Positions 3,294 through 37,496 of a stretch of 64,000 bases of DNA are shown in pieces (position 1 is the first letter of the stretch; the number at the start of each line of letters is the position of its first letter). Location of the stretch: assembly GCF_006345805.1 (NCBI RefSeq), contig NC_043013.1:8804001-8868000 (forward strand), in the 5' to 3' direction. The DNA is from Octopus sinensis. Taxonomy: Eukaryota. The position numbers were made by a program, and so were the translations under genes. A model generated the notes under the pieces. The model searched no databases and had not been told where the DNA came from. It was given only the letters and a program-made list of their open reading frames with translations.

Positions 3294-3342
3294 TTGTTTG
3301 GGTTTCTGACCAGATACCTCAGCCATTTCTTGAAGTTCTAGT
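3294..3342 (-). CDS. Micro-exon B (49 nt, phase 2>0): x-LELQEMAEVSGQKPKQ
   Basis: ATTTTGCAG acceptor and GTAAG donor; only one open frame; identical 49/49 to 29007-29055. Confidence 0.75.
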
Positions 3343-4049
3343 CTGCAAAATCAATAAATGGTAAACTTCCAGGTTAGTAAAATGAATTGTCATGATGTGT
3401 ATAAAGATGAATATTTAAGTCTTTATCCTTTAACTGTGAACGTCGAATAGAAAAGCTGTGTTATTAAAAGGAAAGAAATCGAGACAATGGAAAAGAAACT
3501 CAGCTTTAAGGAATAATATGGCGGGTGAAAAGTTATGCACAGAAAGAATGATTCAGATAGAGATGAAGGCTGAGAGATAAATAAAGATCAAAGGAAGCTA
3601 AGAAATTAAGAGAGAATTCAGAAAGAGGCAATTCCTCAAAGAGAAGCAAGTAGAAATATACCGAAAATTGCAGAAAAGGTGGAGAAATTAAACTTAACAG
3701 AAGCAATTGATAAACAATAAGAACAGCCGGAATTATACCTTAGAAATTATTCTATTCTCATACACACACAAACACATATACAGACACACACACAAGCACA
3801 CACACACATGCACACACACCACAAAAGAGGTGTTTCCATGCAGCAAAAAGAAATGGGCAAATTTGTTGTACCTATATATATATAATTAATAGAAAAAAAG
3901 ACGGACTAAAAGGACAAGTAAAACAACATCGCGAGGACTTGACACATGCAAATTGTGAATAAGACGCTCACAGAAAGAAAGAAAGAAAGAGTGTTTTACG
4001 TTTCGAGCAAAGGTTTTTTCAGAAACAGGAGATGGCGTAAAATTCAAGC

Positions 4050-5240
4050 GAAAAGGAAGACAGGGAAAATAAGGCTTGGATGTGGTGAATTTATGCACTA
4101 GCTTCCCACACCATTATGATATAAAAGCAATCCTCTTCTGGCTAGAAAAATACCCAAATGAGATCCCAGGACGCATCAACCACAGCTTCACAATCCCAGC
4201 ACTGAAATTTAACCTCCAGAACAACTACTTCATGTCCGATATTGTTTACTATCAAGAAAAATGTGGAATTGCAGTGGAACCTCGTACTGCCCCACTGATT
4301 GCGAATTTTGTAATCTAGAAATTAAAATATACCAATTATCACAGCAAAAATATGGTATCTCAAAGGAATTAGACATACGAGCCTTAAGGGAAGTTAACCG
4401 AAATACTACACCAAATTTAAATGTACTCCTATACATCTCCACATATAACTCCAGAAACAATGAGGCATTCAACATCATCATCCAGAATTTACCCATTCGC
4501 ACTGGGGATAAACAATGAACGAAATTTTGGACTCACACAAAATTATCAAAATTTAACCGGCGCAAGATTATATCCCTTAACAACGGAACCAAAAGTGGAA
4601 AATGGGGGTGGCCTAACTGGGGCACATGCTTCCACCTTTGGGGGGGGGTACAGAATTTCACTTCAAACAAGGTGAAATATTTAAGATAAAGTCACATTTC
4701 ACTTTGCCTCTGAAAACCAAATCTATGTTATTACTTGCTTAGGTTGCCAAAACCACTATATAGAACAAACACGAAGAACAACGCTTCAAAAACAACAAAT
4801 CAGTTTCCCACAGTATAGACAGATACATGTTAGTGAGCACATAGATAGATGTGATAGGAGTCTTAAACCAAACTTCCTAAGTTTCCCTTTTTCTCAATGC
4901 TCCCAGAACACCTCAGTGCAGTAATGACTAAATAAAGAGGCAACTTTCAGTAATAAATATCAACCACAACTTAACATGAACACACAACTTAAAACAGGAC
5001 ACTACTAACCTTACTAATACAAGTAATCCCACTAATCCTCAAACATCTCATATACCATTCATACTCTGTTAATCATATTAATCTAATTGCATCACTTTCA
5101 GAACAGCTTACCTCCCTTGCATACAGATACAGATACAGGTACTATTACACCCAACAGCGTTTGGAAATTGGTGTTGATTCAAAGTTAGTGAACAGCGATG
5201 TCGAAACCGGTATGACTTTCTATAATGACTCATGGTAAGG
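4050..5240 (+). mobile_element. Penelope-like element remnant (RT plus GIY-YIG, frameshifted)
   Basis: DVVNLCTSFPH..FWLEKYP..QNNYF..YQEKCGIAV..APLIANF matches PLE RT motifs; IYVITCLGCQNHYIEQT near 4720-4780 is a GIY-YIG remnant. Confidence 0.85.
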
Positions 5241-6055
5241 ATTTTTATACTTCTTAATTTCCCCTCAAATCATTTAATTGTATATATATGTATCTTTGTT
5301 CTAAGAAAAAGAACCATTACTTTTATGCCTAGTGTGCATTTTCTTTGTTTCTTTTTAATTTTTCCTTTTATATATATATATATATATTATTATTATTATT
5401 ATTATTACTATTATTATTATCATCATTATTACTATTTTACCTGCTCTTCTCCCACTGTTCTATCCTATTACTCTGTTATTCTCTCCTTCACTCTTCCTTG
5501 CTCACGTGGCTCCCGCATGACCACCGGACATCTTTCTTATTTTCTCTCCGTTGTAGCTGGAACAAGGAAGACGTGTTCTTGCTTGTATCATGTCCTAGCT
5601 TAATTTACGCGTTCGTCACCACAACCTCGTTTAGGCTTAACAGACCTTCCTGTTTCTTTTCACTGTCCTGGTTGTGTTACCTATTTTGATCCTTTGCAAA
5701 ATCCCAAATTCTACTTAATCTGCTTTGCGGGAGCAACTGTTTTATCGAATGCGTATATTGTTGTTAAATGCTCGAAATACGAGAATAGAGAAACAACCAG
5801 CAACTGATGGCCGGTCGTTCTTCATGTTTGTTTTGTTTTCCATTTGTGTCTTTCGTTGTTCGAAAAAAATAGTTCGTGTTCATGTACACGTGCTTCGTAT
5901 TTTTGTACACGTTTTATGACGTCCTCTGCCCCGATATGCATATATACATTCATACATACATATATATATACGTATAAATGTAAGTATGTACATATACGTA
6001 TGTATATAGGCATATATTATCTATAATATATACATATATATACATATATATATAT

Positions 6056-6157
<102 letters not shown>

Positions 6158-6389
6158 ATATATATGTGTGTATGTGTGTAAATGATCGAAATGTCATACT
6201 CACTCCTTTTAGTGGGCGTCAAGCTATAATACATTTTTGTGTACGTTGTCCCGTTTGTTTTCATTTTTCGTTTTTTAACTCACTATTTTGCACGCGCGCG
6301 CGCACAGCCATATATAGAAATAAACAACAGCTAAAAACGTATATGTATAAGTCACAGAGACTCGCTAATTCTTCATCAGTTTTTCGCTA

Positions 6390-7870
6390 ATACTTTATCA
6401 TAGTTCTAAGCCAAATTCCATCTTTATTTCTTTGGCAAAGCCATGTACTCTCTCTAGTACTGTTTCCAGCTGTTTATCATTTGCAGCGTATAGTTTTAGA
6501 TCATCCTTATACAAGAGTTGGTCGATTGTTTTCCCGTAAAAGTTGTATCCATATCTAATTCTATTTAGCACGTCAGATAAAGGTATCAGTGCCAAGCAGA
6601 AAGAGTGGAAAGATCGTGTCTCCCTGGAATATTACTGTTCTAACGGGGACGGCTCCCTTTCGATTATTGTCGTTACTTTGGTCATAGAATATTATCAAAA
6701 GCTTTTCGATAATCGATCCCAGTCATACTTGGACCATTCTTCTCTTGTCGGCTGTCTTCAGTTATGGCTTTATTGACAGGTAGCTGATGCTTTTGCAGCA
6801 CTCCTTCTTCTGTTTCAGAAACAGGTTGTTATCATCCAGATGTTTGCCCATTCTCTGCAGTAAAGGTTTTGTAAATTGTAGCGAGTCAAGTTATCGGTTT
6901 GTAATTTTGTGGGTTTCCCGTTTCGGTGGACTTGGTAATCAGGAAATGTTTCCCTTCCATGGGCCCTTCAAATATTGTCTCAGGCTCTTTTAATATTTCA
7001 TCAAATTTCCCAGGCATCGTTTTCTGTATTCCTGTTTGATATTTCAACCAGAAATTGGAGACCGCGTAGTGCATGGTTGCCGACCTCTTCAGTTGTTATA
7101 GGAGTCCAGAGTTGTAGAGGAATTGTTTTTGTTACTTTGAAAGACCTTTTCCTAGGTTGTTCCCTCACCGACCATTTTTCTTTCCATTGATCTCTATTTT
7201 ATTTTTGCCAAGTTCTAAGTAGAATCTTTTGAAATTGGAGTAGAACTGTTTGTTTTGTTCAAAGAAACGTTGGCGTATCTCATACTGGCGGATTTTTTGT
7301 ACTTTGGCGAGGATATATCTTGCTTTAGCTGTTCTTTTATCCCAGGTATACTTTGTTCTAGAATTTTCTATTTCCATAGTATTTTACTTCTGTTCTTGTT
7401 GCTTAGTAGTGTTGATTGTCTACTAATTTCCTTAAGGACTGACAGATCCTTTCTTTTATTTTATATCTTTTTCTAGATATTCTTTATCCACAGGATTTTT
7501 TTTAGGTGGTAATTCTCCTGTTTGGATGGGTTTGAGAGGGTATCCAGCTTTGATATATTATAGCATTTAACCTGATTATACTGACGTTTGTTTCTGTGGG
7601 TATTAGTTCCGTGACGGCCAGTTTCCTGTTATTTATTATTAATGTGGCTTTAATATCAATCTTAATTTTTGGGAGCTACAGTCAGTTGTCCATACTGAGA
7701 TCTGAGCCTTTCAATTCTTTGATTATATTCATTTTTAGAGTATCATAATCATTAGTTTCACCTTCACTCTTTTAAGGTTTTAGATTTGTTTCGCTTTCCT
7801 TCCTGTTCATATTTTTTGTCTGTGGTGTTCTGATTTCGTGCATATAGCTCATCATTATACATTCATACGG
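6390..7870 (-). mobile_element. R4/Dong-like non-LTR retrotransposon remnant
   Basis: QLLYKDDLKLYAANDKQLE..EIKMEFGL (RT YxDD region) and KIRQYE..EQNKQF..KRFYLEL N-terminal motif; many stops and frameshifts. Confidence 0.85.
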
Positions 7871-8424
7871 CCTGGGTTTGTTGCCTTTCGTTGTTTTCTT
7901 CCTTTTCGTTACGTTTGACTTCGTATCTTACACTCCCAGTGCTTATGATATTATTTGGCATTGCTGTGTGGTCACTATCTACGATTTCCTAATGTACACT
8001 GAATCGCAAAAGAAACGCAATCTTTTTCAAATGTCATTTTATATTCTAAATATATTTCAGTGATGTAAGAGTAAATATTCCAAAACCTGCTGATTTATGG
8101 CTGAGACCCAAATTACAGGCAGTCTTTAGACTTTCCTGAAACGGGACGCCAAAATGCAGCTGCGTTGAATGTCGTGGGTATCAGTCGCAAACTATTGAAA
8201 AGAAAACCGAAATGCACGTGCATCTCGTGGAGGTTATGGCTCTAAAACCGAACTTGAACCGCATTCCTGGCATTCCAAATTTCTTCGCCTTTGGAGTAGT
8301 TCATTTCGTACGTGAGTGTTGCATTGTTGGATTATTATTGTTGGAACTCCTTCGTGCTTTTTTTTGTTTGTTAACGCCACATTTGTTTATGTTCTGCGTT
8401 TCGCAGGCTTTTTACAACATTATT

Positions 8425-9070
8425 CATATCTATTATATCAACGCCAATGTCTTTATGTGTGTTCGCGTGTTACTTGTGTATTCAAAAACTGCTGCACCGA
8501 TCATAATGAAATTTAGAACACAAAATCAAAGCCTAGGGAGAAGGGCAATGCTGTGTGTTTCATACAATTTCATGGACCAAAATTACTGGATCCTTATGAT
8601 ATTTGAAACTTAGATTCAATGCATAAGGGCAGGTATAATGCAATATGTTTGGTTTGAATTTCAGATGGCTTAAAGGGGGAAGAACCCCTCATGAAAATTC
8701 ATAAATTTTCGATGTTGATGAAATTTCAACCATAAGTAATTGATACACATCAAGAAGTATTCTCAAAGATTCCACTTCATATGAGGATTCTAAGACACCA
8801 TATTGAGGGCCTTAACTCCCAAATTTTAGTCATTTCTTTTATGATCCAAAATTAGGTCAAAAGTACTGAATGGATCTTTACGAAATTTGGGAATTATATT
8901 CTATGCATAAAGGCCATAACCCCCATGACAATTCATATATTTTTGCTGCTGATGAAATTTTAACCACAGATATTAGATACAAATGAAGTAATATTTATAA
9001 AATTTCATCTTCTTGCAAGTTAGAAAGACCCCTTAATGGGGACTTAATACCCACAATTTAATAATTTTAT
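8425..9070 (+). mobile_element. Non-autonomous Helitron/DINE-like repeat (tentative)
   Basis: Starts ATCTATTATATC..TGTGTGTTCGC..CCGATCATAATGAAATTT with internal GATGAAATTT(C/T)AACCA subrepeats; no clear 3' CTAG. Confidence 0.35.
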
Positions 9071-10389
9071 CTAAGCAAAGACGAATACAGTTGTACTCTT
9101 GGAAGCTGTAGGGTCACCCGAGCATAAAGATGAGCATTATTTGTAATTCAATGGTACAACAGTGTAAGAGTTTGCTTTGGCATACACTTAGATTGTGATT
9201 TCTGCAATGTGGTGCATAAATTGTCAAGAAAATGGGAGGCATCTTTGCTTCCGCTGATTCAGTTGCAAAGTGTTGAGTAAAGTTATTTGATTGCAGACCT
9301 CCTTTCAGTCTTTTTATTATCACTGAGTCACACATAGTCCCCAGAGAGTAACATTGATTTCAAGGCCTTCCCAGATGAGTGACTTGTTATTCAAAGACAT
9401 TTATAGATTGTAAATTTATTCTGTCCAGTTACGTATCAGTACAGTGGTCATTTGCAAACTCCAACTTTCATTTATCCTTAGCCATTACGTCACACAGTTG
9501 TTAATGTTTATTTCAGTTGGGTCACGCCCTTCCAATTACTATAGATTCGTAATGCATCTTACGGCTGTAATACTACATTGGGAATATTACATTGGGAGTG
9601 GTAACGACTGGAGTAGGGTAGCTGACTGCTTATTGTGATGATTCGTCTTTTGGTTTCCTGTAGCTTTGCTCTATTTTACAAACCCAGTGAACATATATTT
9701 CCTATTTCAAAGAAATCCAAGCAATAGATATAAGGCCCAAGTTAAAAAGATTCTCAACAATTCAACTTCTCTGCTTGACATTAAGACACCCCCCACCAAT
9801 AGGGGCCTTAACTCTCACATTTTAGAGTGCTCCATGACCTCCATTTTTTAGGAGCAAAATCCTTTTAACAGGTTCTATAAGACAAGAATTTTGGAATATG
9901 CGCATAAAAATCATTAGTATGGGATACATGTGGTACGATTACAATTTTTTTAGGTTGTGTAAAGAGGGAAATAACCCTCATCTGCAATTTTGATGAAATT
10001 CGAAACATTACAGAAAATATAACAGAAAAGTCTAATTCTTCAATTACATGTAACACGGGCAACGTGTATATGCACACAAAGATAAATTGATAGATACAAC
10101 TGAGTGGGCAAACAAAAATATGAGACAGCCTAGTGCTTTTTTTTATGTTGATAAGCCTGGTACTTATTCTATTAGTTTCTTCTTGTGAAACCAGTAAGTT
10201 TCACAAGGTATGCATGTCTGATTTCTTGCTGCCATTTCCGACACAAATATTACCGCAACAATGGCAAAATTCTTTTTTCTCTTGTAAAAAATTCTTCTAC
10301 ATCCTCTTGTGGAGCATTTTCGAACTTACAATTTTCGTTCTTCAAAATTCTGTATAGAGCAGTTGTATACTGTCAACTTTACGTGACAG

Positions 10390-13512: not shown

Positions 13513-13553
13513 TGTGGAGTAGGTTTCAGTAGCTTCCTTTTCTCTTCTCTTAC
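13513..13553 (-). CDS. Micro-exon A1 (41 nt, phase 0>2): VREEKRKLLKPTP-Q
   Basis: ATTATTTTCTAG acceptor and GTAAGT donor; flanks paralogous to A2 and A3; in frame with B2 and B. Confidence 0.7.
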
Positions 13554-20187: not shown

Positions 20188-20233
20188 TTGGGATTCTTCG
20201 TCTTCTTCAGCCGATGATTCAGAAGATAGTGAT
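20188..20233 (-). CDS. Micro-exon B2 (46 nt, phase 2>0): x-SLSSESSAEEDEESQ
   Basis: CATTTTTTGTAG acceptor and GTAATT donor; flanks homologous to exon B flanks (ATTCATAA..CTTTGATGAAATTC; TTAGT.AAA..TTGTCAT; ACAATGGAA). Confidence 0.7.
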
Positions 20234-22656: not shown

Positions 22657-22712
22657 GTATCAGAAGTTATCGATGCCAAAGGCGCTCGAATTTGTGTTTC
22701 TGTTGTTTCAGG
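22657..22712 (-). CDS. Micro-exon A2 (56 nt, phase 0>2): PETTETQIRAPLASITSD-T
   Basis: CTTCTTTTCTCTAG acceptor and GTAAGT donor; paralogous flanks; in frame with B' or C' and with B2. Confidence 0.7.
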
Positions 22713-23493: not shown

Positions 23494-23520
23494 TCACTCT
23501 CTTCTATAAAGCCAAAAGTC
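23494..23520 (-). CDS. Candidate terminal exon D' (DFWLYRRE* if phase 0)
   Basis: CACCGATCACAG acceptor; AATAAA ~180 nt downstream (23312-23317), weak evidence in AT-rich DNA. Confidence 0.35.
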   Translation of the reverse strand, partial: DFWLYRRE

Positions 23521-23594
23521 CTGTGATCGGTGTAACGCACACACACACACACACACACACACGTTCGTGTGCACATATGATTGTGTGTATTATC

Positions 23595-23642
<48 letters not shown>

Positions 23643-23736
23643 CTTACATACATACATACATATATACATACCCATTGACTTGCCGCTGGTGCTTATAGTG
23701 TCGAATACTTTCGGTATGCAAATTAGGGACTCTTAC

Positions 23737-23820
23737 ATAGAGTAACTGCTGCATTTGCTGAGTATGTAAATAGTTTGGCTGCTTGCTTCCCTGGAGACTG
23801 TCAGAATAATGTAGACGCCT
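23737..23820 (-). CDS. Candidate exon C' (84 nt, phase 0>0): RRLHYSDSLQGSKQPNYLHTQQMQQLLY
   Basis: CTTAAT..TTTTCAACCCTTGTTGCGTTCTCATCAG acceptor and CTAT|GTAAGA donor; open in phase 0; competing acceptors exist (e.g. TTTCTCAACAG at ~23883). Confidence 0.45.
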
Positions 23821-23962
23821 CTGATGAGAACGCAACAAGGGTTGAAAATCAATTAAGGTTGTTCATTATATTTTTTTCAATCTGTTGAGAAATGCCTAAA
23901 CTTTGCCCTGTTTATAATTATACGAAATGTTACACACACATATATATATGTATATGTATATT

Positions 23963-24039
<77 letters not shown>

Positions 24040-24125
24040 TATGCATACATACATATATATACACATATATATATACATATGCATACATACATATATATAC
24101 ATACATACATATATATATATATATA

Positions 24126-24578
24126 TTCCACAGCACCCTCTCTCCTTCCCCCTCAGCCCCACGCGGATCATTCCCTTGCTCTAGATCCCGCTGCAACACT
24201 TGCCCCTTCATCACCAACACCACTGCTGTCACTGGCTCCAACCGGCGAAATGTACGTATTAGGCACTCCTTTACGTGCACCTCGTCTGGCCTCATTTACT
24301 GCATTAAATGCAACCTATGCGGGATGCTGTATGTAGGACAGACGGGACGCCGGTTATCCGACCGATTCACAGAACATTTGAGGGACGTTCGCCTACACTC
24401 TTTTTCTCCCGTCGCACGCCACTTCCGCTCGGCCAGCCATTCCCTAGATGACATCTCAGTGTTTGGTCTCGCCCCCCACAATGGTCGTCCACTTTCTAGG
24501 CTCCACTTGGAGCAACGCTACATCTTCACCCTACAAACCACTACCCCACACGGACTTAACACAGCCCCCTCCTCCTAA
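24126..24578 (+). mobile_element. Penelope-like GIY-YIG endonuclease domain, 5'-truncated, intact frame
   Basis: [64 protein letters not shown]; starts abruptly in (TA)n. Confidence 0.92.
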
Positions 24579-24589
24579 GGTTTTTTTTT

Positions 24590-27400: not shown

Positions 27401-27419
27401 GTGACCTCGTGAAGACTAC

Positions 27420-27595
27420 CTGCAATTTTTTTTCCTCTGTCCTCCCGTCTCGGGATCTTTCTTTCTCCTATGTTTCCGACGAAGAGCTCCGCTCGAAACG
27501 TCATACCCTCCTTCTTCCATTTTCCTGAGCGCCTAATAATAATAATACTGTAATTGTTCCACGTGTTGTTTTTTCTGTTTTCCCGTTTGGATTAA

Positions 27596-27600
<5 letters not shown>
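27420..27600 (+). mobile_element. Penelope-like terminal repeat with minimal hammerhead motif
   Basis: GTTT-CCGACGA-A-GAGCtccGCTC-GAAACGTC-ATAC at 27472-27506. Confidence 0.55.
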
Positions 27601-27647
<47 letters not shown>

Positions 27648-27649
<2 letters not shown>

Positions 27650-28540
27650 TAAACAGTAAAATTAATTACAGACATGGACAAGAACATGAAACACCACAGA
27701 GACGACACAAGAACCACAGGACGGGACATTCGAAGCCCTCAGTCATCAGTCAAGAACCAGATCATCTTAGCAATTTCGGCTGATTAATCTTGAGATTGCT
27801 CCGATATGGCCAGCCCGCCAAGGGAAATCTAAGCCAAGCGCATTAGATCCCCTGGAAGAAAGCTTCGAATGTATACAACGAAAGGACGGAAAACGATCGA
27901 AGTACACAAACAAAAATACAGAATACGTGACACCAATAAGAATACAAAAACGTAAAAACAATAACGGTAAAAATAAAAAATAAACAACAAAACAAAACCA
28001 GGACGTAGGACAAGGGTCTTTCGACAGGACGATTTGAGTATGGGGCTGGCTTGTGAAGTTGTGCCTAAAGGCCACGGGGAGACGAACAAATACGTGTTGC
28101 TTCTGAGGCTGCTGAAAACGAAAAGAGCGCTCAACAGCGGCTAGCTGTCACGTGAGAACAAAAGACAGGAGAAAGGGACAGATGAAAAGGGAGAGAAGGT
28201 GGACGAGGGAGGAGAAGAAAGAGACAGATCGAGGGGGCTGGAGGTGAGAGAGATAGAGAAACGTAGAAAGGGGGGGGACGGATGGAGAGGGAAAGAAAGG
28301 AAGTGGAATAAGGGAGGAGAGAGAGAGAGAGAAAAAGAGACAGATTAAGAGTCGTATCAAAGCTTGAGAAAAAAATATACTTATCGTATAAGGACAATTG
28401 TGGATACGTAGCCGCCGATTATATAGGTAAACAGTAAAATTAATTACAGACATGGACAAGAACATGAAACACCACAGAGACGACACAAGAACCACAGGAC
28501 GGGACATTCGAAGCCCTCAGTCATCAGTCAAGAACCAGAT
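27648..28540 (-). mobile_element. Non-coding element with identical 115-bp direct terminal repeats (778-bp period), in (TA)n
   Basis: 27648-27762 equals 28426-28540; related fragment at 57925-58065; strand inferred from the CTGATGA..GAA motif. Confidence 0.75.
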
Positions 28541-29006
28541 ATATATGGGGAAATTAGAAACTGGTTCTACTGGTTTGACTTATGATACGATGATTCTTTC
28601 CATCTCTAATAATATGATATATAGAAGCTGGTTTTTCTAATATTAAAAATTGTCCCCAGTGATATTAAAATGAAAACCACTACACTGACTGTAATAATAT
28701 AACAAAATGGAAGCCTGCAATAAATATATAGAATTTAGTAGCTGAATCTACCAAAAAGAGATAAAATAGAGTTCTACCTTCTTCAAAAATTGCAGATAGC
28801 TCTACCAGTCTGAAAAATAATAGCTTGGTCTACCAGTATAAATGATAGCAACCAGTCGTATCAATGTGAGAATATATATGAAATTATTCATAAACAGAAT
28901 ATACAGCGTTCATTTTAAGCAAATCCTTTGATGAAATTCTCAAGAAATAATCCATCACAATTCAGAACTATTCAAGTATATTTTAAGATGAAAAAAAAAA
29001 GCTTAC

Positions 29007-29055
29007 TTGTTTGGGTTTCTGACCAGATACCTCAGCCATTTCTTGAAGTTCTAGT
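29007..29055 (-). CDS. Micro-exon B' (49 nt, phase 2>0): x-LELQEMAEVSGQKPKQ
   Basis: Identical to exon B; canonical splice sites; in frame with A3 upstream. Confidence 0.75.
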
Positions 29056-29433
29056 CTGCAAAATCAATAAATGGTAAAATTCCAGGTCAGTAAAATGAAT
29101 TGTCATGATGTGTATAAAGATGAATATTCAAGTCTTTATCCTTTAACTGTGAACGTCGAATAGAAAATTTGTGTTATTAAATGGAAAGAAATCGAGACAA
29201 TGGAAAAGAAACTCAGCTTTAAGGAATAATATGGCGGGTGAAAAGTTATGCACAGAAAGATTGATTCAGATAGAGACGAAGGTTGAGAGATAATCAAAGG
29301 AAGCTAAGAGAGAATTCAGAAAGAGGCAATTCCTCAAAGAGAAGCAAGTGGAAATATACCGAAAATGGCAGAAAAGGTGGAGAAATTAAACTTAACAGAA
29401 GCAATTGATAAACAATAAGAACAGCAGGAATTA

Positions 29434-30687
29434 CGAGGGGCGTTCAATAAGTAATGCCCCTGACCCACTTCCCATACCAGTAGAGCAACGGAACTTGGCA
29501 CCGTTATTGGTCTTTTTCTACATAGGAACCACTCAGAGTTATGCATTTCTCCCATCGTTTGATCCAGCTCTGGAGACCGTTTTTGTAAAAGACCCCAGCT
29601 TGGTCCTCCAACCACGACGTGACTTTAGAAATCAAGGCTGCATCATCTGGGAAATGCTTTCCTTTCAAAAACAACTTCATGGCTGGGAAGAAGTGAAAAT
29701 CAGAGGGTGCAAGGTCAGGAGAGTAGGGGGGTGGGGGAGGAGTTCATAGCCGCACGCCTGTGCTTCTGATCTGGCGACACGCGAGTTGTGGACCGGAGCG
29801 TTGTCCTGCAGGAGGAGGATGCCTTCGCTGAACTTGCCCCGCCTCTTGATTTTGATAGCTTCTCTTAATTTCCTCAAAAGTGAAGCATAATAGGCTCCTG
29901 TAATTGTGGTACCCTTTGCCAGGAAATCTGTCATCACTACTCCGTCCTGGTCCCAGAAGACTGTGAGCATGACCTTGCCAGCAGAGGGCTGCACGCTTGC
30001 CTTCTTTGGAGGAGGTGAGTCACGGTGCTTCCACTGCATTGACTGGGCTTTGGTCTCTGGATCATAGTGATGGACCCAGGTTTCATCCTGTGTAATCAGT
30101 CTTTTGAAAAAGTTTGACTCATCTTCTTGGTACGTCTCCAAATTCATCCTCGAGCACTCGACGCGTTCTCGCTTCTGGAAAGGTGTGAGCAACCTGGGAA
30201 TCCATCTGGCAGACACCTTTTGCATATGCAAATGGTCATGAATGATAGTTTCCACTGACCCGGTACTAATCTTGACCTCATGGGCTATTTGGCGAATAGT
30301 TATGCGTCGATCTTCCAAAATGGCAGCCTCAACTTGACGGACAGATGCCTCATCAATGGCAGAAGGGGGTCGACCAGATCTGGGAGCTGTTTCCACAGAA
30401 TTCCGACCATGTTTGAATTCACGATGCCAGCGTTTTACAAGGTCATATGATGGGGCATCATCACCATAAGTTACTTTCATTTCATCAAAAGTCTTCCGTG
30501 GTGTGCGTCCTTTCAAATACAAAAACCGGATCACTGCTCGACACTCAACAGGCTCCATTTCACACTTGACTTAGAGCTGTAATTTGCCACCTAATCTATG
30601 GAGATATAAGTAATTTCACATGCAAAATTTCAACTAGATCAAACACCTGGAAGTGGGTCAGAGGCATTACTTATTGAACGTCCCTCG
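29434..30687 (-). mobile_element. Mariner (Tc1/mariner, DD34D) transposon, full length 1254 bp
   Basis: 39-bp TIRs CGAGGG(G/A)CGTTCAATAAGTAATGCC(C/T)CTGACCCACTTCC; TA duplication at 29432-33 and 30688-89; empty site in the paralog at 3734-3735. Confidence 0.97.
29504..30558 (-). CDS. Mariner transposase with a single -1 frameshift
   Basis: HTH N-terminus, WIPRLL, TQDETW, QDNAPVH; one extra base in the G6 run at 29726-29731 restores YSPDLAPSD and a 351-aa ORF ending YVEKDQ*. Confidence 0.93.
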
Positions 30688-30761
30688 TATACCTTAGAAA
30701 TTATTCTATTCTCATACACACAAAAACACACATACAGACACACACACACACATATATATAT

Positions 30762-30852
<91 letters not shown>

Positions 30853-31019
30853 AAAAGAGGTGTTTCCATGCAGCAAAAAGAAAAGGACAAGTAAAACAAC
30901 ATCGCGAGGACTTGACACATGCAAATTGTGAATAAGACGCTCACAGAATGAAAGAAAGAAAGAGTGTTTTACGTTTCGAGCAAAGGTCTTTTTCAGAAAC
31001 AGAGGATGGCGTAAAATTC

Positions 31020-32210
31020 AAGCGAAAAGGAAGACAGGGAAAATAAGGCTTGGATGTGGTGAATTTATGCACTAGCTTCCCACACCATTATGATATAAAA
31101 GCAATCCTCTTCTGGCTAGAAAAATACCCAAATGAGATCCCAGGACGCATCAACCACAGCTTCACAATCCCAGCACTGAAATTTAACCTCCAGAACAACC
31201 ACTTCATGTCCGATACAGTTTACTATCAAGAAAAATGTGGAATTGCAGTGGGACCTCGTGCTGCCCCACTGATTGCGAATTTTGTAATGTAGAAATTAAA
31301 ATATACCAATTATCACAGCAAAAATATGGTACCTCAAAGGAATTAGACATACGAGCCTTAAGGGAAGTTAACCGAAATACTACACCAAATTTAAATGTAC
31401 TCCTATACATCTCCACATATAACTCCAGAAACAATGAGGCATTCAACATCATCATCCAGAATTTACCCATTCGCACTGGGGATAAACAATGAACGAAATT
31501 TTGGACTCACACAAAATTATCAAAATTTAACCGGCGCAAGATTATATCCCTTAACAACGGAACCAAAGGTGCAAAATGGGGGTGGCCTAACTGGGGCACA
31601 TGCTTCCACCTTTTGGGTGGGGGGTACAGAATTTCACTTCAAACAAGGTAAAATATTTAAGATAAAGTCACATTTCACTTTGCCTCTGAAAACCAAATCT
31701 ATGTCATTACTTGCTTAGGTTGCCAAAACCACTATATAGGACAAACACGAAGAACAACGCTTCAAAAACAACAAATCAGTTTCCCACAGTATAGGCAGAT
31801 ACATGTTAGTGAGCACATAGATAGATGTGAAAGGAATCTTAAACCAAACTTCCTTATTTTCCCTTTTTCTCAATGCTCCCAGAACACCTCAGTGCAGTAA
31901 AGACTAAATAAAGAGGCAACTTTCAGTAATAAATATCAACCACAACTTAACATGAACACACAACTTAATACAGGACACTACTAACCTTATTAATACAAGT
32001 AATCCCACTAATCCTCAAACATCTCATATACCATTCATACTCTGTTAATCATATTAATCTAATTGCATCACTTTCAGAACAGCTTACCTCCCTTGCATAC
32101 AGATACAGATACAGGTACTATTAGACCCAACAGCGTTTGGAAATTGGTGTTGATTCAAAGTTAGGGAACAGCGATGTCGAAACCGGTATGACTTTCTATA
32201 ATGACTCATG
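31020..32210 (+). mobile_element. Penelope-like remnant, duplicate of 4050-5240
   Basis: Near-identical ORFs 31050-31292 and 31235-31492. Confidence 0.85.
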
Positions 32211-32340
32211 GTAAGGATTTTTATACTTCTTAATTTCCCCTCAAATCATTTAATTGTATATATATGTATCTTTGTTCTAAGAAAAAGAACCATTACTTTT
32301 ATGCCTAGTGTGCATTTTCTTTGTTTCTTTTTAATTTTTC

Positions 32341-32413
<73 letters not shown>

Positions 32414-32939
32414 ATTATTATTAATATTATTTTACCTGCTCTTCTCCCATTGTTCTATCCTATTACTCTGTTATTCTCTCCTTCACTCTTCCTTGCTCAC
32501 GTGGCTCCCGCGTGACCATCGGACATCTTTCTTATTTTCTCTCCGTTGTAGCTGGAACAAGGAAGACGTGTTCTTGCTTGTATCATGTCCTAGCTTAATT
32601 TACGCGTTCGTCACCACAACCTCGTACAGGCTTAACAGCCCTTCCTGTTTCTTTTCACTGTCCTGGTTGTGTTACCTATTTTGATCCTCCGCAAAATCCC
32701 AAATTCTACTAAATTAGCTTTGCGGGAGCAACTGTTTTATCGAATGCGTATATTGTTGTTAAATGCTCGAAATACGAGAATAGAGAAACAATCAGCAACT
32801 GATGGCCGGTCGTTCTTCATGTTTGTTTTGTTTTCCATTTGTGTCTTTCGTTGTTCGAAAAAAATAGCTCGTGTTCCATGTACACGTGCTTCGTATTTTT
32901 GTACACGTTTTATGACGTCCTCTGCCCAGATATGCATAT

Positions 32940-33013
<74 letters not shown>

Positions 33014-33098
33014 GTATAAATGTAAGTATGTACATATGCGTATATATATAGGCATATATTATCTATAATATATACATATATATATACATATATATATT

Positions 33099-33199
<101 letters not shown>

Positions 33200-33419
33200 G
33201 TGTGTGCGTGTGTAAATGATCGAAATGTCATACTCACTCCTTTCAGTGGCGTCAAGCTATAATACATTTTTGTGTACGTTGTCCCGTTTGTTTTCATTTT
33301 TCGTTTTTTAACTCACTATTTTGCACGCGCGCGCGCACAGCCATATATAGAAATAAACAACAGCTAAAAACGTATATGTATAAGTCACAGAGACTCGCTA
33401 ATTCTTCATCAGTTTTTCG

Positions 33420-34890
33420 CTAATACTTTATCATAGTTCTAAGCCAAATTCCATCTTTATTTCTTTGGCAAAGCCATGTACTCTCTCTAGTACTGTTTCC
33501 AGCTGTTTATCATTTGCAGCGTATAGTTTTAGATCATCCTTATACAAGAGTTGGTCGATTGTTTTCCCGTAAAAGTTGTATCCATATCTAATTCTGTTTA
33601 GCACGTCAGATAAAGGTATCAGTGCCAAGCAGAAAGAGTGGAAAGATCGTGTCTCCCTGGAATATTACTGTTCTAACGGGGACGGCTCCCTTTCGATTAT
33701 TGTCGTTACTTTGGTCATAGAATATTATCAAAAGCTTTTCGATAATCGATCCCAGTCATACTTGGACCATTCTTCTCTTGTCGGCTGTCTTCAGTTATGG
33801 ATTTATTGACAGGTATCTGATGCTTTTGCAGCACCCCTTCTTCCGTTTCAGAAACAGGTTGTTATCTTCCAGATGTTTGCCCATTCTCTGCAGTGAAGGT
33901 TTTGTAAATTGTAGCGAGACAAGTTACGGTTTGTAATTTTGTGGGTTTCCCGTTTCAGTGGACTTGGTAATCAGGAAATGTTTCCCTTCCATGGGCCCTT
34001 GAAATATTGTCTCAGGCTCTTTTAGTATTTCATCAAATTTCCCGGGCATCGTTTTCTGTATTCCTGTTTGATATTTCAACCAGAAATTGGAGACCGCGTA
34101 GTGCATGGTTGCCGACCTCTTCAGCTGCTATAGGAGTCCAGAGTTGTAGAGGAGCTGTTTTTGTTACTTTGAAAGACATTTTCCTAGGTTGTTCCCTCAC
34201 CAACCATATTTCTTTCCATTGATTTCTATTTTATTTTTGCCAAGTTCTAAGTAGAATCTTTTGAAATTGGAGTAGAACTGTTTGTTTTGTTCAAAGGAAC
34301 GTTGGCGTATCTCATACTGGCGGATTTTTTGTACTCTTGCTTTAGCTGTTCTTTTATCCCAGGTATACTTTGTTCTAGAATTTTCTATTTCCATAGTATT
34401 TTACTTCTGTTCTTGTTGCTTAGTAGTGTTGATTATCTACTAATCTCCTTAAGGACTGACAGATCCTTTCTTTTATTTTATATCTTTTTCTAGATATTCT
34501 TTATCCACAGGGTTTTTTTAGGTGGTAATTCTTCTGTTTGGATGGGTTTGAGAGGGTATCTAGCTTTGATATATTATAGCATTTAACCTGATCATACTGA
34601 CGTTTGTTTCTGTGGGTATTAGTTCCGTGACGGCCAGTTTCCTATTATTTATTATTAATGTGGCTTTAATATCAACCTTAATTTTGGGGAGCTACAGTCA
34701 GTTGTCCATACTGAGATTTGAGCCTTTCAATTCTTTGATTATATTCATTTTTAGAGTATCATAATCATTAGTTTCACCTTCACTCTTTTAAGGTTTTAGA
34801 TTTGTTTCGCTTTCCTTCCTGTTCATATTTTTTGTCTGTGGTGTTCTGATTTCGTGCATATAGCTCATCATTATACATTCATACGGCCTG
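33420..34890 (-). mobile_element. R4/Dong-like LINE remnant, duplicate of 6390-7870
   Basis: ORF 33431-33628 identical in translation to 6398-6595. Confidence 0.85.
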
Positions 34891-37443
34891 GGTTTGTTGC
34901 CTTTCGTTGTTTTCTTCCTTTTCGTTACGTTTGACTTCGTATCTTACACTCCCAGTGCTTATGATATTATTTGGCATTGCTGTGTGGTCACTATCTACGA
35001 TTTCCTAATGTACACTGAATCGCAAAAGAAACGCAATCTTTTTCAAATGTCATTTTATATTCTAAATATATTTCAGTGATGTAAGAGTAAATATTCCAAA
35101 ACCTGCTGATTTATGGCTGAGACCCAAATTACAGGCAGTCTTTAGACTTTCCCGAAACGGGACGCCAAAATGCAGCTGCGTTGAATGTCGTGGGTATCAG
35201 TCGCAAACTATTGAAAAGAAAACCGAAATGCACGTGCATCTCGTGGAGGTTATGGCTCTAAAAATGAACTTGAACCGCATTCCTGGCATTCCAAATTTCT
35301 TCGCCTTTGGAGTAGTTCATTTCGCATTGTGGCATTGTTGGATTATTATTGTTGGAACTCCTTCCTGCTTTCTTTTTTTGTTAACGCCACATTTGTTTAT
35401 GTTCTGCGTTTCGCAGGCTTTTTTCAACATTGTTCATATCTATTATATCAACGCCAATGTCTTTATGTGAGTTCGCGTGTTACTTGTGTATTCAAAAACT
35501 GCTGCACCGATCATAATGAAATTTAGAACACAAAATCAAAGCCTAGGGAGAAGGGCAATGCTGTGTGTTTCATACAATTTCATGGACCAAAATTACTGGA
35601 TCCTTATGATATTTGAAACTTAGATTCAATGCATAAGGGCAGGTATAATGCAATATGTTTGGTTTAAATTTCAGATGGCTTAAAGGGGGAAGAACCCCCC
35701 CATGAAAATTCATAAATTTTCGATGTTGATGAAATTTCAACCATAAGTAATTGATACACATCAAGAAGTATTCTCAAAGATTCCACTTCATATGAGGATT
35801 CTAAGACACCATATTGAGGGCCTTAACTCCCAAATTTTAGTCATTTCTTTTATGATCCAAAATTAGGTTAAAAGTACTGAATGGATCTTTACGAAATTTG
35901 GGAATTATATTCTATGCATAAAGGCCATAACCCCCATGACAATTCATATATTTTTGCTGCTGATGAAATTTTAACCACAGATATTAGATACAAATGAAGT
36001 AATATTTATAAAATTTCATCTTCTTGCAAGTTAGAAAGACCCCTTAATGGGGACTTAATACCCACAATTTAATCATTTTATCTAAGCAAAGACGAATACA
36101 GTTGTACTCTTGGAAGCTGTAGGGTCACCCGAGCATAAAGATGAGCATTGTTTGTAATTCAATGGTACAACAGTGTAAGAGTTTGCTTTGGCATACACTT
36201 AGATTGTGATTTCTGCAATGTGGTGCATAAATTGTCAAGAAAATCGGAGGCATCTTTGCTTCCGCTGATTCAGTTGCAAAGTGTTGAGTAAAGTTATTTG
36301 ATTGCAGACCTCCTTTCAGTCTTTTTATTATCACTGAGTCACACATAGTCCCCAGAGAGTAACATTGATTTCAAGGCCTTCGCAGATGAGTGACTTGTTA
36401 TTCAAAGACATTTATAGATTGTAAATTTATTCTGTCCAGTTACGTATCAGTACAGTGGTCATTAGCAAACTCCAACTTTCATTTATCCTTAGCCCTCACG
36501 TCACACAGTTGTTAATGTTTATTTCAGTTGGGTCACGCCCTTCCAATTACTATAGATTCGTAATGCATCTTACGGCTGTAATACTACATTGGGAATATTA
36601 CATTGGGAGTGGTAACGACTGGAGTAGGGTAGCTGACTGCTTATTGTGATGATTCGTCTTTTGGTTTCCTGTAGCTTTGCTCTATTTTACAAACCCAGTG
36701 AACATATATTTCCTATTTCAAAGAAATTCAAGCAATAGATATATGCATACAAATAGAAAAGATGTTGCAATTATTATATAGCATAACAGATTGTAGAGTA
36801 GTTTTAACTGTTTTATGGAAAGACCTAAGTTTTTTCACTTACATGGAGGTACTACATTATGTGTATATTTATGAAAATTAGGCTTCATATAAATTTATTA
36901 AGAATTGGTAGATTTTATAACAGAAATGTAGGCATTCTTGCATCGTTCTGTCACAATAAAATACGTCAAATATCATTGAAATGACGTAATATTAAATAGC
37001 ATTGTAGGTAGAAATTCACTGCCAATTAATAAAATCCGTATGTTTTATATTAATTCTTTCACTTGGTGTAGAGACTTCGTAAAACATTAATCTTATTTTG
37101 GTTATTAATGTTCTAAATTTTTCTAAGGTGACTAAGTTACCTGAACTTACAGGCTGTTGTACAAAATACTTGCCATATATCATTTCTTAACTGTCGATTC
37201 TCTTTCATTTTTCCATCATGGAAAATACTCAATAACATCGCTTTCCCTTTATATAAATGCCAGTAATATGGTGGGGTAAATATAGTTTATTCTTTCTTTT
37301 ATTATTGTTGAAATTGTTCAAATACTAAAGGATAAAAGCAATACTTAAAATTCTCTAAGGATCAGATATGAAGAGATTTAGAGGTTTAGTGGTGTCTTTA
37401 AATATGATGAGTAAATGTAATATGGAAATGTTTGTCTACTTAC

Positions 37444-37496
37444 CCATTGGCAGAAGATGCCATTGCCACCGGCCTTCGTCCTCCACCTCTTCGAAT
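37444..37496 (-). CDS. Micro-exon A3 (53 nt, phase 0>2): IRRGGGRRPVAMASSAN-G
   Basis: ATTATTCTCTAG acceptor and GTAAGT donor; ~400 nt of flank paralogous to A1 and A2. Confidence 0.7.

What the first reader, a model, noticed from the sequence alone, without database searches (positions are those of the whole stretch)
3294..37496. Hidden minus-strand gene built from 41-56 nt micro-exons over 34 kb
Seen: six short segments bounded by polypyrimidine-AG and GTAAG/GTAAT (A3 37444-37496, B' 29007-29055, A2 22657-22712, B2 20188-20233, A1 13513-13553, B 3294-3342). Lengths 53/49/56/46/41/49 alternate phase 0>2 and 2>0. They splice in genomic order to 294 stop-free nt: IRRGGGRRPVAMASSANG-LELQEMAEVSGQKPKQ-PETTETQIRAPLASITSDT-SLSSESSAEEDEESQ-VREEKRKLLKPTPQ-LELQEMAEVSGQKPKQ. 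None is in the ORF track. Inference: a disordered, lineage-restricted region. Dibasic sites (RR, KRK) and S-x-E motifs (the FAM20C consensus, as in secreted phosphoproteins) fit a secreted precursor, but a receptor cytoplasmic tail is equally possible. I do not recognise the family.
Basis: partly seen in the sequence, partly recalled or inferred. Interest (0 to 1): 0.8.

Follow-up and report, generated by a model that had tools for sequence, protein, structure and literature searches.

The report
Octopus TRPM channel N-terminal micro-exon array
The six tiny exons are real: they encode the start of an octopus TRPM-family ion-channel gene, a floppy repeated cytoplasmic head piece already present in database gene models of sister octopus species, not a hidden secreted protein.

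Summary
All six minus-strand segments sit at the stated coordinates with AG/GT boundaries and join into one 294-nt open frame. Splice consensus alone is not beyond chance: about 56 similar segments lie on that strand.

Three things make the exons real:
- They form a tandem triplication of a two-exon A+B module (102/102/90 nt).
- The window is the orthologue, at 96-98% nucleotide identity, of an Octopus vulgaris locus (OX597830.1, 69.12-69.22 Mb). The annotated gene there, CAI9735616.1, uses four of the six exons' orthologues and a B-type exon of identical sequence.
- Three O. vulgaris paralogue models (CAI9735612.1, CAI9735658.1, CAI9735597.1) carry the same A-B-A2-B2-A1-B order, followed by a TRPM SLOG domain. 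O. sinensis RefSeq TRPM-like-2 isoforms include or skip such exons.

The array is therefore the N-terminal extension of a TRPM2-like channel paralogue. It is probably disordered and has no signal peptide, so it should be cytoplasmic. The start codon (ATGCAG) lies at 43942-43937, and the channel body lies outside the window.

A-type exons diverge about eight times faster than their flanking introns, almost only at non-synonymous sites (pN 0.154, pS 0.013).

The secreted-precursor reading is not supported. No RNA was examined for this locus. Interest is moderate.

The parts
43937..43942 (-). Initiator coding exon end: ATG CAG followed by donor GTAAAT (encodes MQ). The 5' UTR extent is unknown.
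   Evidence: The CDS of O. vulgaris model P0002 starts at L001:10001, which maps at 98% identity to window 44042-43642. The sequence was read. P0001, P0002 and P0004 all begin MQI(R/G)RGGG. The start is inferred from gene models, not from RNA.
37444..37496 (-). Exon A3, 53 nt, phase 0 to 2, IRRGGGRRPVAMASSANG. It contains an internal ATG in good context, used as the start in P0005 (MASSANG).
   Evidence: The exon is 100% identical to the O. vulgaris orthologue L001:16452-16504.
29007..29055 (-). Exon B', 49 nt, phase 2 to 0, (G)LELQEMAEVSGQKPKQ. It contains an internal ATG, used as the start in the O. sinensis RefSeq isoforms (MAEVSG..).
   Evidence: It is identical to exon B and to L001:24524-24572. 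The same peptide is present in P0001, P0004 and P0005.
22657..22712 (-). Exon A2, 56 nt, phase 0 to 2, PETTETQIRAPLASITSDT. Hypervariable.
   Evidence: It differs from the O. vulgaris orthologue at 7 of 56 nt, all non-synonymous, against 15 of 800 in the flanks.
20188..20233 (-). Exon B2, 46 nt, phase 2 to 0, SLSSESSAEEDEESQ (acidic serine cluster).
   Evidence: It is identical in O. vulgaris and is present in P0002 and P0004, and as SPSSESSAEEDEESQ in P0001 and P0005.
13513..13553 (-). Exon A1, 41 nt, phase 0 to 2, VREEKRKLLKPTPQ (basic).
   Evidence: The O. vulgaris orthologue is 44 nt (IGGQEKRKLLKPTPQ). It differs by 2 substitutions plus an in-frame 3-nt indel.
3294..3342 (-). Exon B, 49 nt, phase 2 to 0, LELQEMAEVSGQKPKQ. 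Its donor is GTAAGC, so the gene continues to the left, beyond the window.
   Evidence: Its orthologue is L001:85538-85586, with 0 differences in 49 nt.
37591..37617 (-). 27-nt intronic element TACTGTTACTTATATACCTCCTCCTTC, 94 nt upstream of the A3 acceptor. Copies lie at 22810-22836 (97 nt upstream of A2) and 13641-13667 (87 nt upstream of A1, 2 mismatches). It is a candidate splicing-regulatory element, or a distal branch point plus pyrimidine tract.
   Evidence: alignment. One search found 3 matches in the window against 0 expected. One search found 5 matches in L001, all upstream of A-type exons. The function is inferred.
37350..37926 (-). Conserved island around A3. It is paralogous to 22564-23168 (A2) and 13476-13868 (A1) at about 70-75% identity. 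The exon itself is the least conserved part.
23567..36743 (-). Copy of a recently duplicated or converted intron-plus-B block, about 95% identical to 2145-9732. It is interrupted by window-specific insertions at about 23950-28538 and 29434-30687.
   Evidence: self-BLAST; comparison with L001.
2145..9732 (-). The other copy of the duplicated block, carrying exon B and most of the A1-B intron.

Best explanation
The window comes from an Octopus of the vulgaris/sinensis complex. It holds the 5' coding region of one paralogue of the octopus TRPM2-like channel cluster, which NCBI names 'TRPM member-like 2'.

After a 6-nt initiator exon (ATGCAG), the minus strand carries three tandem copies of a two-exon module. 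The A exons are 41-56 nt and run from phase 0 to 2. The B exons are 46-49 nt and run from phase 2 to 0. Each module is therefore 90-102 nt and symmetric in phase.

Spliced in order, the modules encode about 100 residues. The peptide has no hydrophobic or aromatic residues. It contains a Gly/Arg stretch, an acidic serine cluster (SSESSAEEDEE, a CK2-type consensus) and a basic KRK stretch. In paralogues this peptide sits directly N-terminal to the TRPM homology (SLOG/MHR) region, so it is a cytoplasmic, intrinsically disordered head piece of the channel subunit.

Only whole A+B pairs keep the reading frame, so the modules can be added, lost or skipped as units:
- O. vulgaris has four modules at this locus where the window has three.
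- One O. sinensis RefSeq isoform skips the internal modules.
- Three in-frame ATGs give alternative N-termini.

A-type exons evolve under diversifying selection or exon-focused gene conversion. B-type exons are kept identical.

Shown here: the exon anatomy, the paralogy, the orthology to an annotated O. vulgaris gene, the identical module order in TRPM-SLOG proteins, the frame-specific substitution pattern, and the absence of a signal peptide.

Inferred: that this particular locus is transcribed, that it splices to a TRPM body lying outside the window, and that the tail tunes regulation, partner binding or localisation of the channel through phosphorylation and isoform choice.
For: Anatomy and frame:
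- The coordinates, boundaries and single open frame are confirmed.
- The A/B paralogy and the recent 95% identical block are shown.

Database proteins:
- The exhaustive HMMER search found P0001 (E 2e-46, query 1-98 aligned to protein 3-101) and P0002 (E 4e-37).
- Both are O. vulgaris proteins on chromosome OX597830.1.
- P0001 carries LSDAT_euk, 'SLOG in TRPM', at E 3e-70.

Orthology:
- L001, the locus of P0002, is collinear with the window at 96-98% identity.
- P0002's exons map onto A3, A2, B2 and A1. Its B-type exons come from other L001 copies, one identical in sequence to B and B'.

Module order in paralogues:
- P0004, P0001 and P0005 share the order A-B-A2-B2-A1-B-A2'-B2', followed by 'KWI(K/E)..IKLR' and the SLOG domain.
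- O. sinensis RefSeq isoforms X1, X2 and X3 include such exons and X4 skips them.
- P0006 is a full TRPM channel, closest to solved TRPM2 structures at E 1e-143. Its homology with them starts at residue 96-104, after the micro-exon part.

Constraint and selection:
- All 11 O. vulgaris exon copies keep their splice sites and frame, and length classes are constant modulo 3.
- A exons have pN 0.154 and pS 0.013, against a flanking-intron divergence of 0.018. Fisher's test of exon against flank gives p = 3e-8. Synonymous differences number 0.5 in frame 0, against 3.0 and 6.5 in the other two frames.

Disorder:
- The AlphaFold2 model of P0006 has pLDDT 25-44 over residues 1-107 and 70-90 in the SLOG and channel domains.
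- The window peptide has a maximum Kyte-Doolittle score of 0.40 over 15 residues and no F, W, Y or C.
Against: - No RNA evidence was examined for this locus. The O. vulgaris models come from an EVM consensus of transcripts, protein alignments and ab initio predictions (PMC10700109), so they could be partly predictor-driven.
- P0002, the orthologous model, is visibly flawed. It contains a 56-aa hydrophobic 'junk' exon, it skips B', and it ends in an exon that is antisense intron sequence created by a palindrome in the assembly.
- No SLOG or channel exon lies in the window, so linkage to a TRPM body is not shown.
- The paralogue models P0001, P0003, P0004 and P0005 hold two to four SLOG copies and no pore domain, which suggests fused or fragmentary models in a segmentally duplicated region.
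- The O. sinensis RefSeq gene spans 687 kb across other genes. It may be chimeric, built from multi-mapping reads.
- Within the old paralogue islands the exons are less conserved than their introns, which is unusual for coding exons.
Confidence: 0.78

Rival explanations
1. Orphan or decaying 5' fragment. The array is a genuine duplicate of the TRPM-like N-terminal exons, but at this locus it is no longer joined to a functional channel body. It would then be a segmental-duplication relic, at most giving a short or non-coding transcript.
For: - No TRPM core exon lies in the window.
- The orthologous O. vulgaris model ends without a SLOG domain and runs into a palindrome.
- The region is a mosaic of recent duplications and transposable-element insertions.
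- The O. vulgaris B' donor is weakened to GTAGCT.
Against: - All six exons, and all O. vulgaris copies, keep an open frame, their AG/GT sites and their phase classes.
- Four exons are identical between the two genomes.
- The excess of non-synonymous change is frame-specific, which implies the frame has been read recently.
- In paralogues the next exons (A2', B2' and the TRPM start) follow after large introns, so their absence from the 3.3 kb left of exon B is expected.
Confidence: 0.15
2. Not exons at all. On this reading the segments are splice-site look-alikes inside a tandemly duplicated non-coding unit, and the database proteins are ab initio artefacts propagated across paralogous copies.
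For: - Splice consensus alone gives about 56 comparable segments on the strand.
- The exon columns are the least conserved part of the A islands.
- The O. vulgaris models contain obvious artefacts.
- The word-indexed protein search found nothing.
Against: - NCBI RefSeq models in a second species, made by an independent pipeline, contain A- and B-type exons as alternatively used cassettes at the N-terminus of a complete TRPM channel.
- Indels are in frame and length classes are constant modulo 3 in every copy.
- Substitutions avoid synonymous positions in frame 0 only, and exon divergence is 8 times that of the flanks, with boundaries that coincide with AG/GT.
- The negative is uninformative. 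The same tool also missed P0001, P0004 and P0005 when queried with their own alignment.
Confidence: 0.04
3. One reading: a secreted, FAM20C-phosphorylated, dibasic-processed precursor protein.
For: Only composition supports it: S-x-E motifs at residues 58 and 62, and RR and KRK stretches.
Against: - There is no signal peptide or hydrophobic stretch anywhere in the 100 residues.
- The annotated N-termini start MQIRRGGG, MASSANG or MAEVSG.
- In paralogues the array is fused to the cytoplasmic TRPM SLOG domain.
- The S-x-E sites lie in an acidic serine cluster that fits the cytosolic CK2 consensus S-x-x-E/D equally well.
Confidence: 0.01
4. A non-coding host gene whose conserved introns carry small RNAs (snoRNA or miRNA), with unconstrained exons.
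For: The introns flanking the A exons are more conserved than the exons among the old paralogues. This includes a near-invariant 27-nt element.
Against: - Rfam finds no family at gathering threshold, and no tRNA genes are found.
- The consensus fold of the conserved 280 nt is only -7.9 kcal/mol, with essentially no covariation.
- The coding signatures listed above also argue against it.
Confidence: 0.02

Closest known systems
Octopus vulgaris CAI9735616.1 (P0002; gene at OX597830.1:69,117,021-69,221,662, assembly GCA_951406725.2)
   Same: It is the orthologous locus, collinear with the window at 96-98% nucleotide identity. Its model uses the ATGCAG start and the orthologues of A3, A2, B2 and A1. 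It also uses two B-type exons, one of which (L001:85539-85586) is the orthologue of window exon B and identical to it.
   Different: - The O. vulgaris locus has a fourth module (Bvar/Avar), 26 kb of extra sequence between B' and A2, and a palindromic repeat.
- The model skips B', inserts a hydrophobic 56-aa exon absent from the window, and ends in an antisense-intron exon.
- The A2 and A1 peptides differ from the window's at 6 and 3 positions.
Octopus vulgaris 'TRPM SLOG domain-containing proteins' CAI9735612.1 (P0004), CAI9735658.1 (P0001) and CAI9735597.1 (P0005)
   Same: They share the module order A-B-A2-B2-A1-B, with 77-86% amino-acid identity to the window peptide. They show what follows the array: a fourth module and then the TRPM N-terminal 'KWI..IKLR' motif and SLOG domain.
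   Different: They are paralogous loci on the same chromosome. The models hold 2-3 SLOG copies and no pore domain, and they span 180-190 kb, so they are probably fused or incomplete.
Octopus sinensis RefSeq 'TRPM member-like 2' isoforms X1-X4 (XP_036366250.1 to XP_036366253.1)
   Same: This is a complete TRPM channel (LSDAT_euk, TRPM2, Ion_trans). Its N-terminus is built from B-type and A2-type micro-exons. Isoform X4 skips the internal ones, which shows cassette behaviour.
   Different: It starts at the ATG inside a B exon. Its exon sequences differ (MAEVSGQKTKQ, PETRETQIQPPMASTSFDI, PERQEMAQVYCQKPKQ). The gene range is 687 kb and spans unrelated genes.
TRPM2 and the TRPM-beta clade of channels (solved examples: human 6mix, Nematostella 6co7)
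   Same: The family that carries the array has the TRPM homology region and the six-TM pore. Its best solved match is TRPM2, at E 1e-143.
   Different: - The alignment with solved TRPM structures starts only at residue 96-104 of P0006, so they showed no detectable counterpart of the micro-exon head piece.
- The octopus proteins are about 1090 aa, against about 1500 aa for TRPM2, and no NUDT9H-type Pfam domain was listed for them.
- Recent phylogenies split the sequences that NCBI calls 'TRPM-like 2' among several clades (PMC13143021). The clade of this paralogue was not determined.
Schistosoma micro-exon genes (MEGs) (from my own knowledge)
   Same: They have arrays of very short exons separated by long introns, generate protein variants by exon skipping, and evolve fast in a lineage-restricted way.
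   Different: MEG exons are individually symmetric (multiples of 3), and MEG products are secreted with signal peptides. Here symmetry holds only for A+B pairs, and the product is the cytoplasmic end of a channel.
Genes whose exons diverge faster than their introns, such as snake venom PLA2 and conotoxins (from my own knowledge)
   Same: They show the same signature: a non-synonymous excess confined to exons, with introns nearly identical.
   Different: Those are secreted effector proteins under an arms race. Here the hypervariable part is a disordered intracellular tail, and gene conversion among paralogues is an untested alternative cause.

Membership tests
Octopus TRPM-like N-terminal A/B micro-exon array (as in CAI9735612.1, CAI9735658.1, CAI9735597.1) | Same module order and recognisable sequence identity across the whole array | tested here: met
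   HMMER gave E 2e-46 with 77% identity, query 1-98 aligned to P0001 3-101. The segment-by-segment table shows the same order in P0004, P0001 and P0005.
Octopus TRPM-like N-terminal A/B micro-exon array (as in CAI9735612.1, CAI9735658.1, CAI9735597.1) | Exon phase classes (A = 2 mod 3, B = 1 mod 3) and AG/GT boundaries kept in all copies | tested here: met
   the 6 window copies and the 11 L001 copies all comply.
Octopus TRPM-like N-terminal A/B micro-exon array (as in CAI9735612.1, CAI9735658.1, CAI9735597.1) | Transcription and splicing of the exons at this locus | not testable with these tools
   No read data are available. The only support is gene models built in part from Iso-Seq and RNA-seq and the RefSeq isoforms.
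TRPM channel family | TRPM homology region / SLOG domain (Pfam LSDAT_euk) encoded by the same gene | tested here: inconclusive
   It is absent from the 64-kb window (tblastn). It is present directly after the same array in paralogues P0001, P0004, P0005 and P0006. The gene leaves the window after exon B.
TRPM channel family | Six-TM pore domain (Ion_trans) and TRP helix | tested here: inconclusive
   Not in the window. Present in O. sinensis P0006 and P0033, which carry related micro-exons.
   The maximum Kyte-Doolittle score over 15 residues is 0.40. The N-termini are MQIRRGGGRRP.., MASSANG.. or MAEVSGQ... No dedicated signal-peptide predictor was available.
Schistosome-type micro-exon genes | Individually symmetric micro-exons flanked by exons for a signal peptide and a C-terminus | tested here: not met
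   The exon lengths of 53/49/56/46/41/49 nt are not multiples of 3, and there is no signal peptide.
Small-RNA host gene | Structured or Rfam-recognisable RNA in the conserved introns | tested here: not met

The most novel reading that the evidence does not exclude
The A-type micro-exons may be a genuinely hypervariable, positively selected cassette system. On this reading, octopus TRPM2-like paralogues diversify a disordered cytoplasmic head piece in three ways: exon-confined non-synonymous change (pN/pS of about 12, with exons 8 times more diverged than introns), gain and loss of phase-locked two-exon modules between sister species, and alternative module and start-codon use. A conserved 27-nt intronic element upstream of every A exon would control inclusion. 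That would be a new way of giving channel paralogues individual regulatory or targeting identities in a cephalopod sensory or neural gene cluster.
Probability: 0.25. Interest if true: 0.6.

Novelty: new member of a known kind. Interest (0 to 1): 0.38.

Why it matters
For annotation, this is a real 5' gene segment that ORF-based tracks cannot see. The public sister-species model of it is partly wrong: it has a junk exon, skips B', and ends in an exon created by a palindrome. The corrected chain is ATGCAG-A3-B'-A2-B2-A1-B, and the next exons should be sought further downstream.

For biology, an expanded TRPM2-like cluster in octopus carries a lineage-restricted, modular, disordered N-terminal extension. 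Half of its exons are frozen and the other half change almost only at amino-acid-altering sites. If transcription and selection are confirmed, this gives a tractable case of how tandem exon duplication and cassette splicing diversify the regulation of sensory ion channels.

It is not a new kind of gene or system.

Tried and rejected
- **Word-indexed protein search, 98-aa peptide.** No hit. This later proved a false negative, because the exhaustive HMMER search found P0001 and P0002. A profile search with the same tool again returned only P0002. Negatives from that tool are therefore ignored.
- **Exact look-ups of window transposon ORFs to obtain local gene calls.** Not on record.
- **Look-ups for paralogue DNA.** The look-up of P0006 was not on record. 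P0001, P0004 and P0033 were found, but their gene ranges are too long, so no DNA was returned. Paralogue loci could not be compared at nucleotide level.
- **ncRNA-host idea.** Rejected on Rfam, tRNA and RNAalifold results.
- **Splice-site scan as evidence.** Rejected as insufficient on its own.
- **Structure prediction of the window peptide through alignment A4.** A permitted homologue, P0006, was modelled instead.
- **Literature searches for a described cephalopod TRPM micro-exon array.** Nothing specific was found.

Full report
**1. Observation**

- The segments are 53, 49, 56, 46, 41 and 49 nt.
- Each is preceded by a pyrimidine-rich tract ending in AG. Each is followed by GTAAGT (the A segments), GTAAGC (B and B') or GTAATT (B2).
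- The window is eukaryote-like. It has 37% G+C, many microsatellites, one 100-N gap, transposon ORFs, and no tRNA or Rfam hits.

**2. Is it more than chance?**

Splice consensus alone is not enough. With thresholds set at the weakest scores reached by the six, a simple position-weight scan finds 56 open AG..GT segments of 35-60 nt on the minus strand and 35 on the plus strand. A phase-compatible chain could be assembled by picking.

The signal lies elsewhere.
- **Paralogy.** Self-comparison shows that A3, A2 and A1 are paralogues lying in 400-650-nt islands of about 70-75% identity. B, B' and B2 are paralogues too, with B/B' at 97% and B2 at about 60% over about 550 nt. The two types alternate strictly.
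- **Recent block.** A recent block of about 7.6 kb (2145-9732, matching 23567-36743, about 95% identity) carries B and B', which are identical.
- **Phase classes.** All A lengths are 2 mod 3 and all B lengths are 1 mod 3. Each A+B pair is therefore 102, 102 or 90 nt and phase-symmetric.

**3. External evidence**

The word-indexed protein search found nothing. The exhaustive HMMER search of 1.84 billion representatives found two proteins:
- P0001 is 677 aa, with E 2e-46, and query 1-98 aligns to residues 3-101.
- P0002 is 210 aa, with E 4e-37.

Both are Octopus vulgaris models on chromosome OX597830.1, with accessions CAI9735658.1 and CAI9735616.1. P0001 carries the Pfam domain 'SLOG in TRPM' (LSDAT_euk, E 3e-70).

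The locus of P0002 (L001, OX597830.1:69,117,021-69,221,662) is collinear with the window at 96-98% nucleotide identity, with the window's minus strand equal to the gene strand. The window is therefore the orthologous locus in a very close relative or in another assembly. O. sinensis is my guess; I did not test it.

P0002's CDS starts with ATGCAG|GTAAAT, which maps to window 43942-43937. It then uses the orthologues of A3, A2, B2 and A1, plus two B-type exons at other L001 positions (75.5 and 85.5 kb), the second being the orthologue of window exon B.

**4. What the gene is**

Searching with P0001 retrieved the family.
- O. vulgaris models P0004 (CAI9735612.1) and P0005 (CAI9735597.1), together with P0001, have the same segment order as the window: A-B-A2-B2-A1-B. 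They continue with a fourth module, then 'S(Q/D)KKWI..IKLR' and the TRPM SLOG domain.
- O. sinensis RefSeq 'TRPM member-like 2' isoforms X1-X3 (about 1090 aa, with LSDAT_euk, TRPM2 and Ion_trans domains) start inside a B-type exon (MAEVSGQKTKQ). They continue through A2-type and B-type micro-exons. Isoform X4 jumps from the first B exon straight to 'KSDKKWIEEN', which is whole-cassette skipping.
- P0006 matches solved TRPM2 structures at E 1e-143, with homology beginning at residue 96-104, after the micro-exon part.
- In an AlphaFold2 model of P0006, residues 1-107 have pLDDT 25-44, while the SLOG and channel domains reach 70-90. The alignment is thin over the N-terminus, so this fits disorder but does not prove it.
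- The window peptide has no F, W, Y or C, a mean hydropathy of -1.0, and no hydrophobic stretch.
- No TRPM core exon is present in the window. The gene leaves the window after exon B.

**5. Evolutionary signature**

Between the window and O. vulgaris, exons A3, B', B2 and B are identical (0 differences in 197 nt), while the flanks differ by about 1-2%.
- A2 differs at 7 of 56 nt, against 15 of 800 in its flanks.
- A1 differs by two substitutions plus an in-frame 3-nt indel.
- Within O. vulgaris, A3 and its recent copy Avar differ at 8 of 53 exon positions, against 11 of 600 flank positions.

Pooled Nei-Gojobori counts for these three A pairs give pN = 0.154 (17.5 of 113.3 sites) and pS = 0.013 (0.5 of 39.7 sites), against an intron divergence of 0.018. 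Fisher's test of exon against flank gives p = 3e-8.

The deficit of synonymous change is specific to the proposed frame: 0.5 synonymous differences, against 3.0 and 6.5 in the other two frames.

The boundary of the fast-evolving segment coincides with the AG and GT sites. This argues that the segments are read as codons in this frame. It points to diversifying selection, or to exon-focused gene conversion from other paralogues, which I could not separate from selection without the paralogue DNA.

All 11 exon copies in the O. vulgaris locus keep AG/GT and an open frame. The one exception is a weakened donor (GTAGCT) at O. vulgaris B', the very exon its model skips.

Among the older paralogues the exons are the least conserved part of their islands. 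A 27-nt element lies 87-97 nt upstream of every A acceptor and is nearly invariant. It occurs nowhere else in the window or in L001. It does not form a conserved RNA structure. I read it as a candidate splicing element, by inference.

**6. Mechanism proposed**

The array encodes a cytoplasmic, intrinsically disordered N-terminal head piece of a TRPM2-like channel subunit. It contains a Gly/Arg stretch, an acidic serine cluster fitting the CK2 consensus, and a basic KRK stretch.

Only A+B pairs preserve the reading frame, so modules behave as units.
- Over evolutionary time, the window has three modules and O. vulgaris has four.
- In splicing, isoform X4 skips the internal modules.
- Three in-frame ATGs give alternative N-termini: in the first exon, in A3 and in B. 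The A3 and B ATGs have a purine at -3 and G at +4, and all three are used by one or another annotated model.

I infer that the head piece tunes regulation, partner binding or localisation in a way specific to each paralogue and isoform. This was not tested.

**7. Caveats**

- No reads were available, so transcription of this locus is not shown.
- The O. vulgaris annotation is an EVidenceModeler consensus of Iso-Seq and RNA-seq assemblies, protein alignments and ab initio predictions (PMC10700109).
- P0002 contains a hydrophobic 56-aa exon absent from the window. Its terminal exon is the antisense of intron sequence next to A-type exons, created by a palindrome centred near L001:86,170.
- The paralogue models carry several SLOG copies and no pore domain.
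- The O. sinensis gene spans 687 kb across unrelated genes.
- This is a segmentally duplicated, hard-to-assemble region, and an orphan 5' fragment remains possible (about 15%).

**8. Comparison and novelty**

The secreted/FAM20C idea does not, and 'receptor cytoplasmic tail' is essentially right.

The closest known entities are the annotated O. vulgaris and O. sinensis TRPM-like genes themselves. The resemblance to schistosome micro-exon genes and to venom-type 'exons faster than introns' evolution is functional or evolutionary only, and their membership features are not met.

I found no paper describing this array.

**Verdict:** a real feature, a new member of a known kind (the 5' end of an annotated gene family), and of moderate interest because of the modular architecture and the exon-confined non-synonymous divergence.

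Noticed in passing
window 29434-30687 (ORF 29677-30558, minus strand): A mariner/Mos1-type transposase ORF of 293 aa (Pfam Transposase_1 at E 3e-25, plus HTH_48). It sits in a 1.25-kb insertion that interrupts the B' copy of the duplicated block. The insertion is absent from the paralogous copy (junction at 3734/3735) and from the O. vulgaris orthologue, so it is recent and specific to this genome.
   Followed up: partly
window 45464-48999 (ORF 45864-48323, minus strand): A non-LTR retrotransposon ORF of 819 aa (RVT_1 at E 6.5e-31, plus zf-RVT), flanked by (ATAG)n arrays. The whole 3.5 kb is missing from the O. vulgaris orthologue: L001 positions 8489 and 8501 abut, with a 12-nt overlap that may be a target-site duplication. 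It lies in the intron between the start exon's upstream region and the rest of the locus.
   Followed up: partly
window 23950-28538: A 4.6-kb stretch dominated by degenerate (CACA/ACAT)n repeats, with strong negative GC skew (about -0.5) and 44-46% G+C. It is represented by only about 330 bp in O. vulgaris. The long 'HTHTH' ORFs there are repeat artefacts.
   Followed up: partly
window 59772-59930 and 60156-60314: A perfect 159-bp inverted repeat (100% identity) flanking or overlapping an ORF with a weak GIY-YIG hit (59858-60343, E 4e-4, below the Pfam cut-off). It may be a Penelope-like element fragment or an assembly artefact. Unexplained.
   Followed up: no
L001 (O. vulgaris OX597830.1) about 75,000-97,500, centre about 86,170: A large palindrome: B, Avar and Bvar exons reappear in inverted order and orientation (86,764-86,811; 94,839-94,892; 96,913-96,960). 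The last exon of gene model CAI9735616.1 (94,532-94,639) is the antisense of intron sequence next to A-type exons. This is likely a fold-back assembly artefact or a real inverted duplication, and either way the model's 3' end is unreliable.
   Followed up: partly
L001 25,677-52,194, against window 23,247-23,619: O. vulgaris has about 26 kb between B' and A2 where the window has about 0.4 kb. The hydrophobic 'junk' exon of CAI9735616.1 (L001:42,842-42,997) lies in this extra DNA.
   Followed up: no
L001 24,573 (donor of O. vulgaris B'): The donor reads GTAGCT instead of GTAAGC, a 1-nt deletion. This may explain why the O. vulgaris model skips that exon. The window keeps GTAAGC.
   Followed up: partly
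O. sinensis gene of XP_036366250.1 (GCA_006345805.1): The RefSeq TRPM-like-2 gene range is 687 kb and encloses three other called genes, including an HR1/BRO1/PDZ protein and an NAD-binding dehydrogenase-like protein. Either the 5' micro-exons splice over very long distances, or the model is chimeric because the arrays are multi-copy.
   Followed up: no
tool behaviour: The word-indexed homologue search missed P0001, P0004 and P0005, although they share exact stretches of up to 31 residues with the query. Negatives from it on short, low-complexity queries should not be trusted.
   Followed up: yes
window 301-521, 39530-39748, 39791-39992, 40521-40648, about 57410-57460: A dispersed repeat family of about 200 bp (65-78% identity), present at both ends of the locus. 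It was not classified.
   Followed up: no
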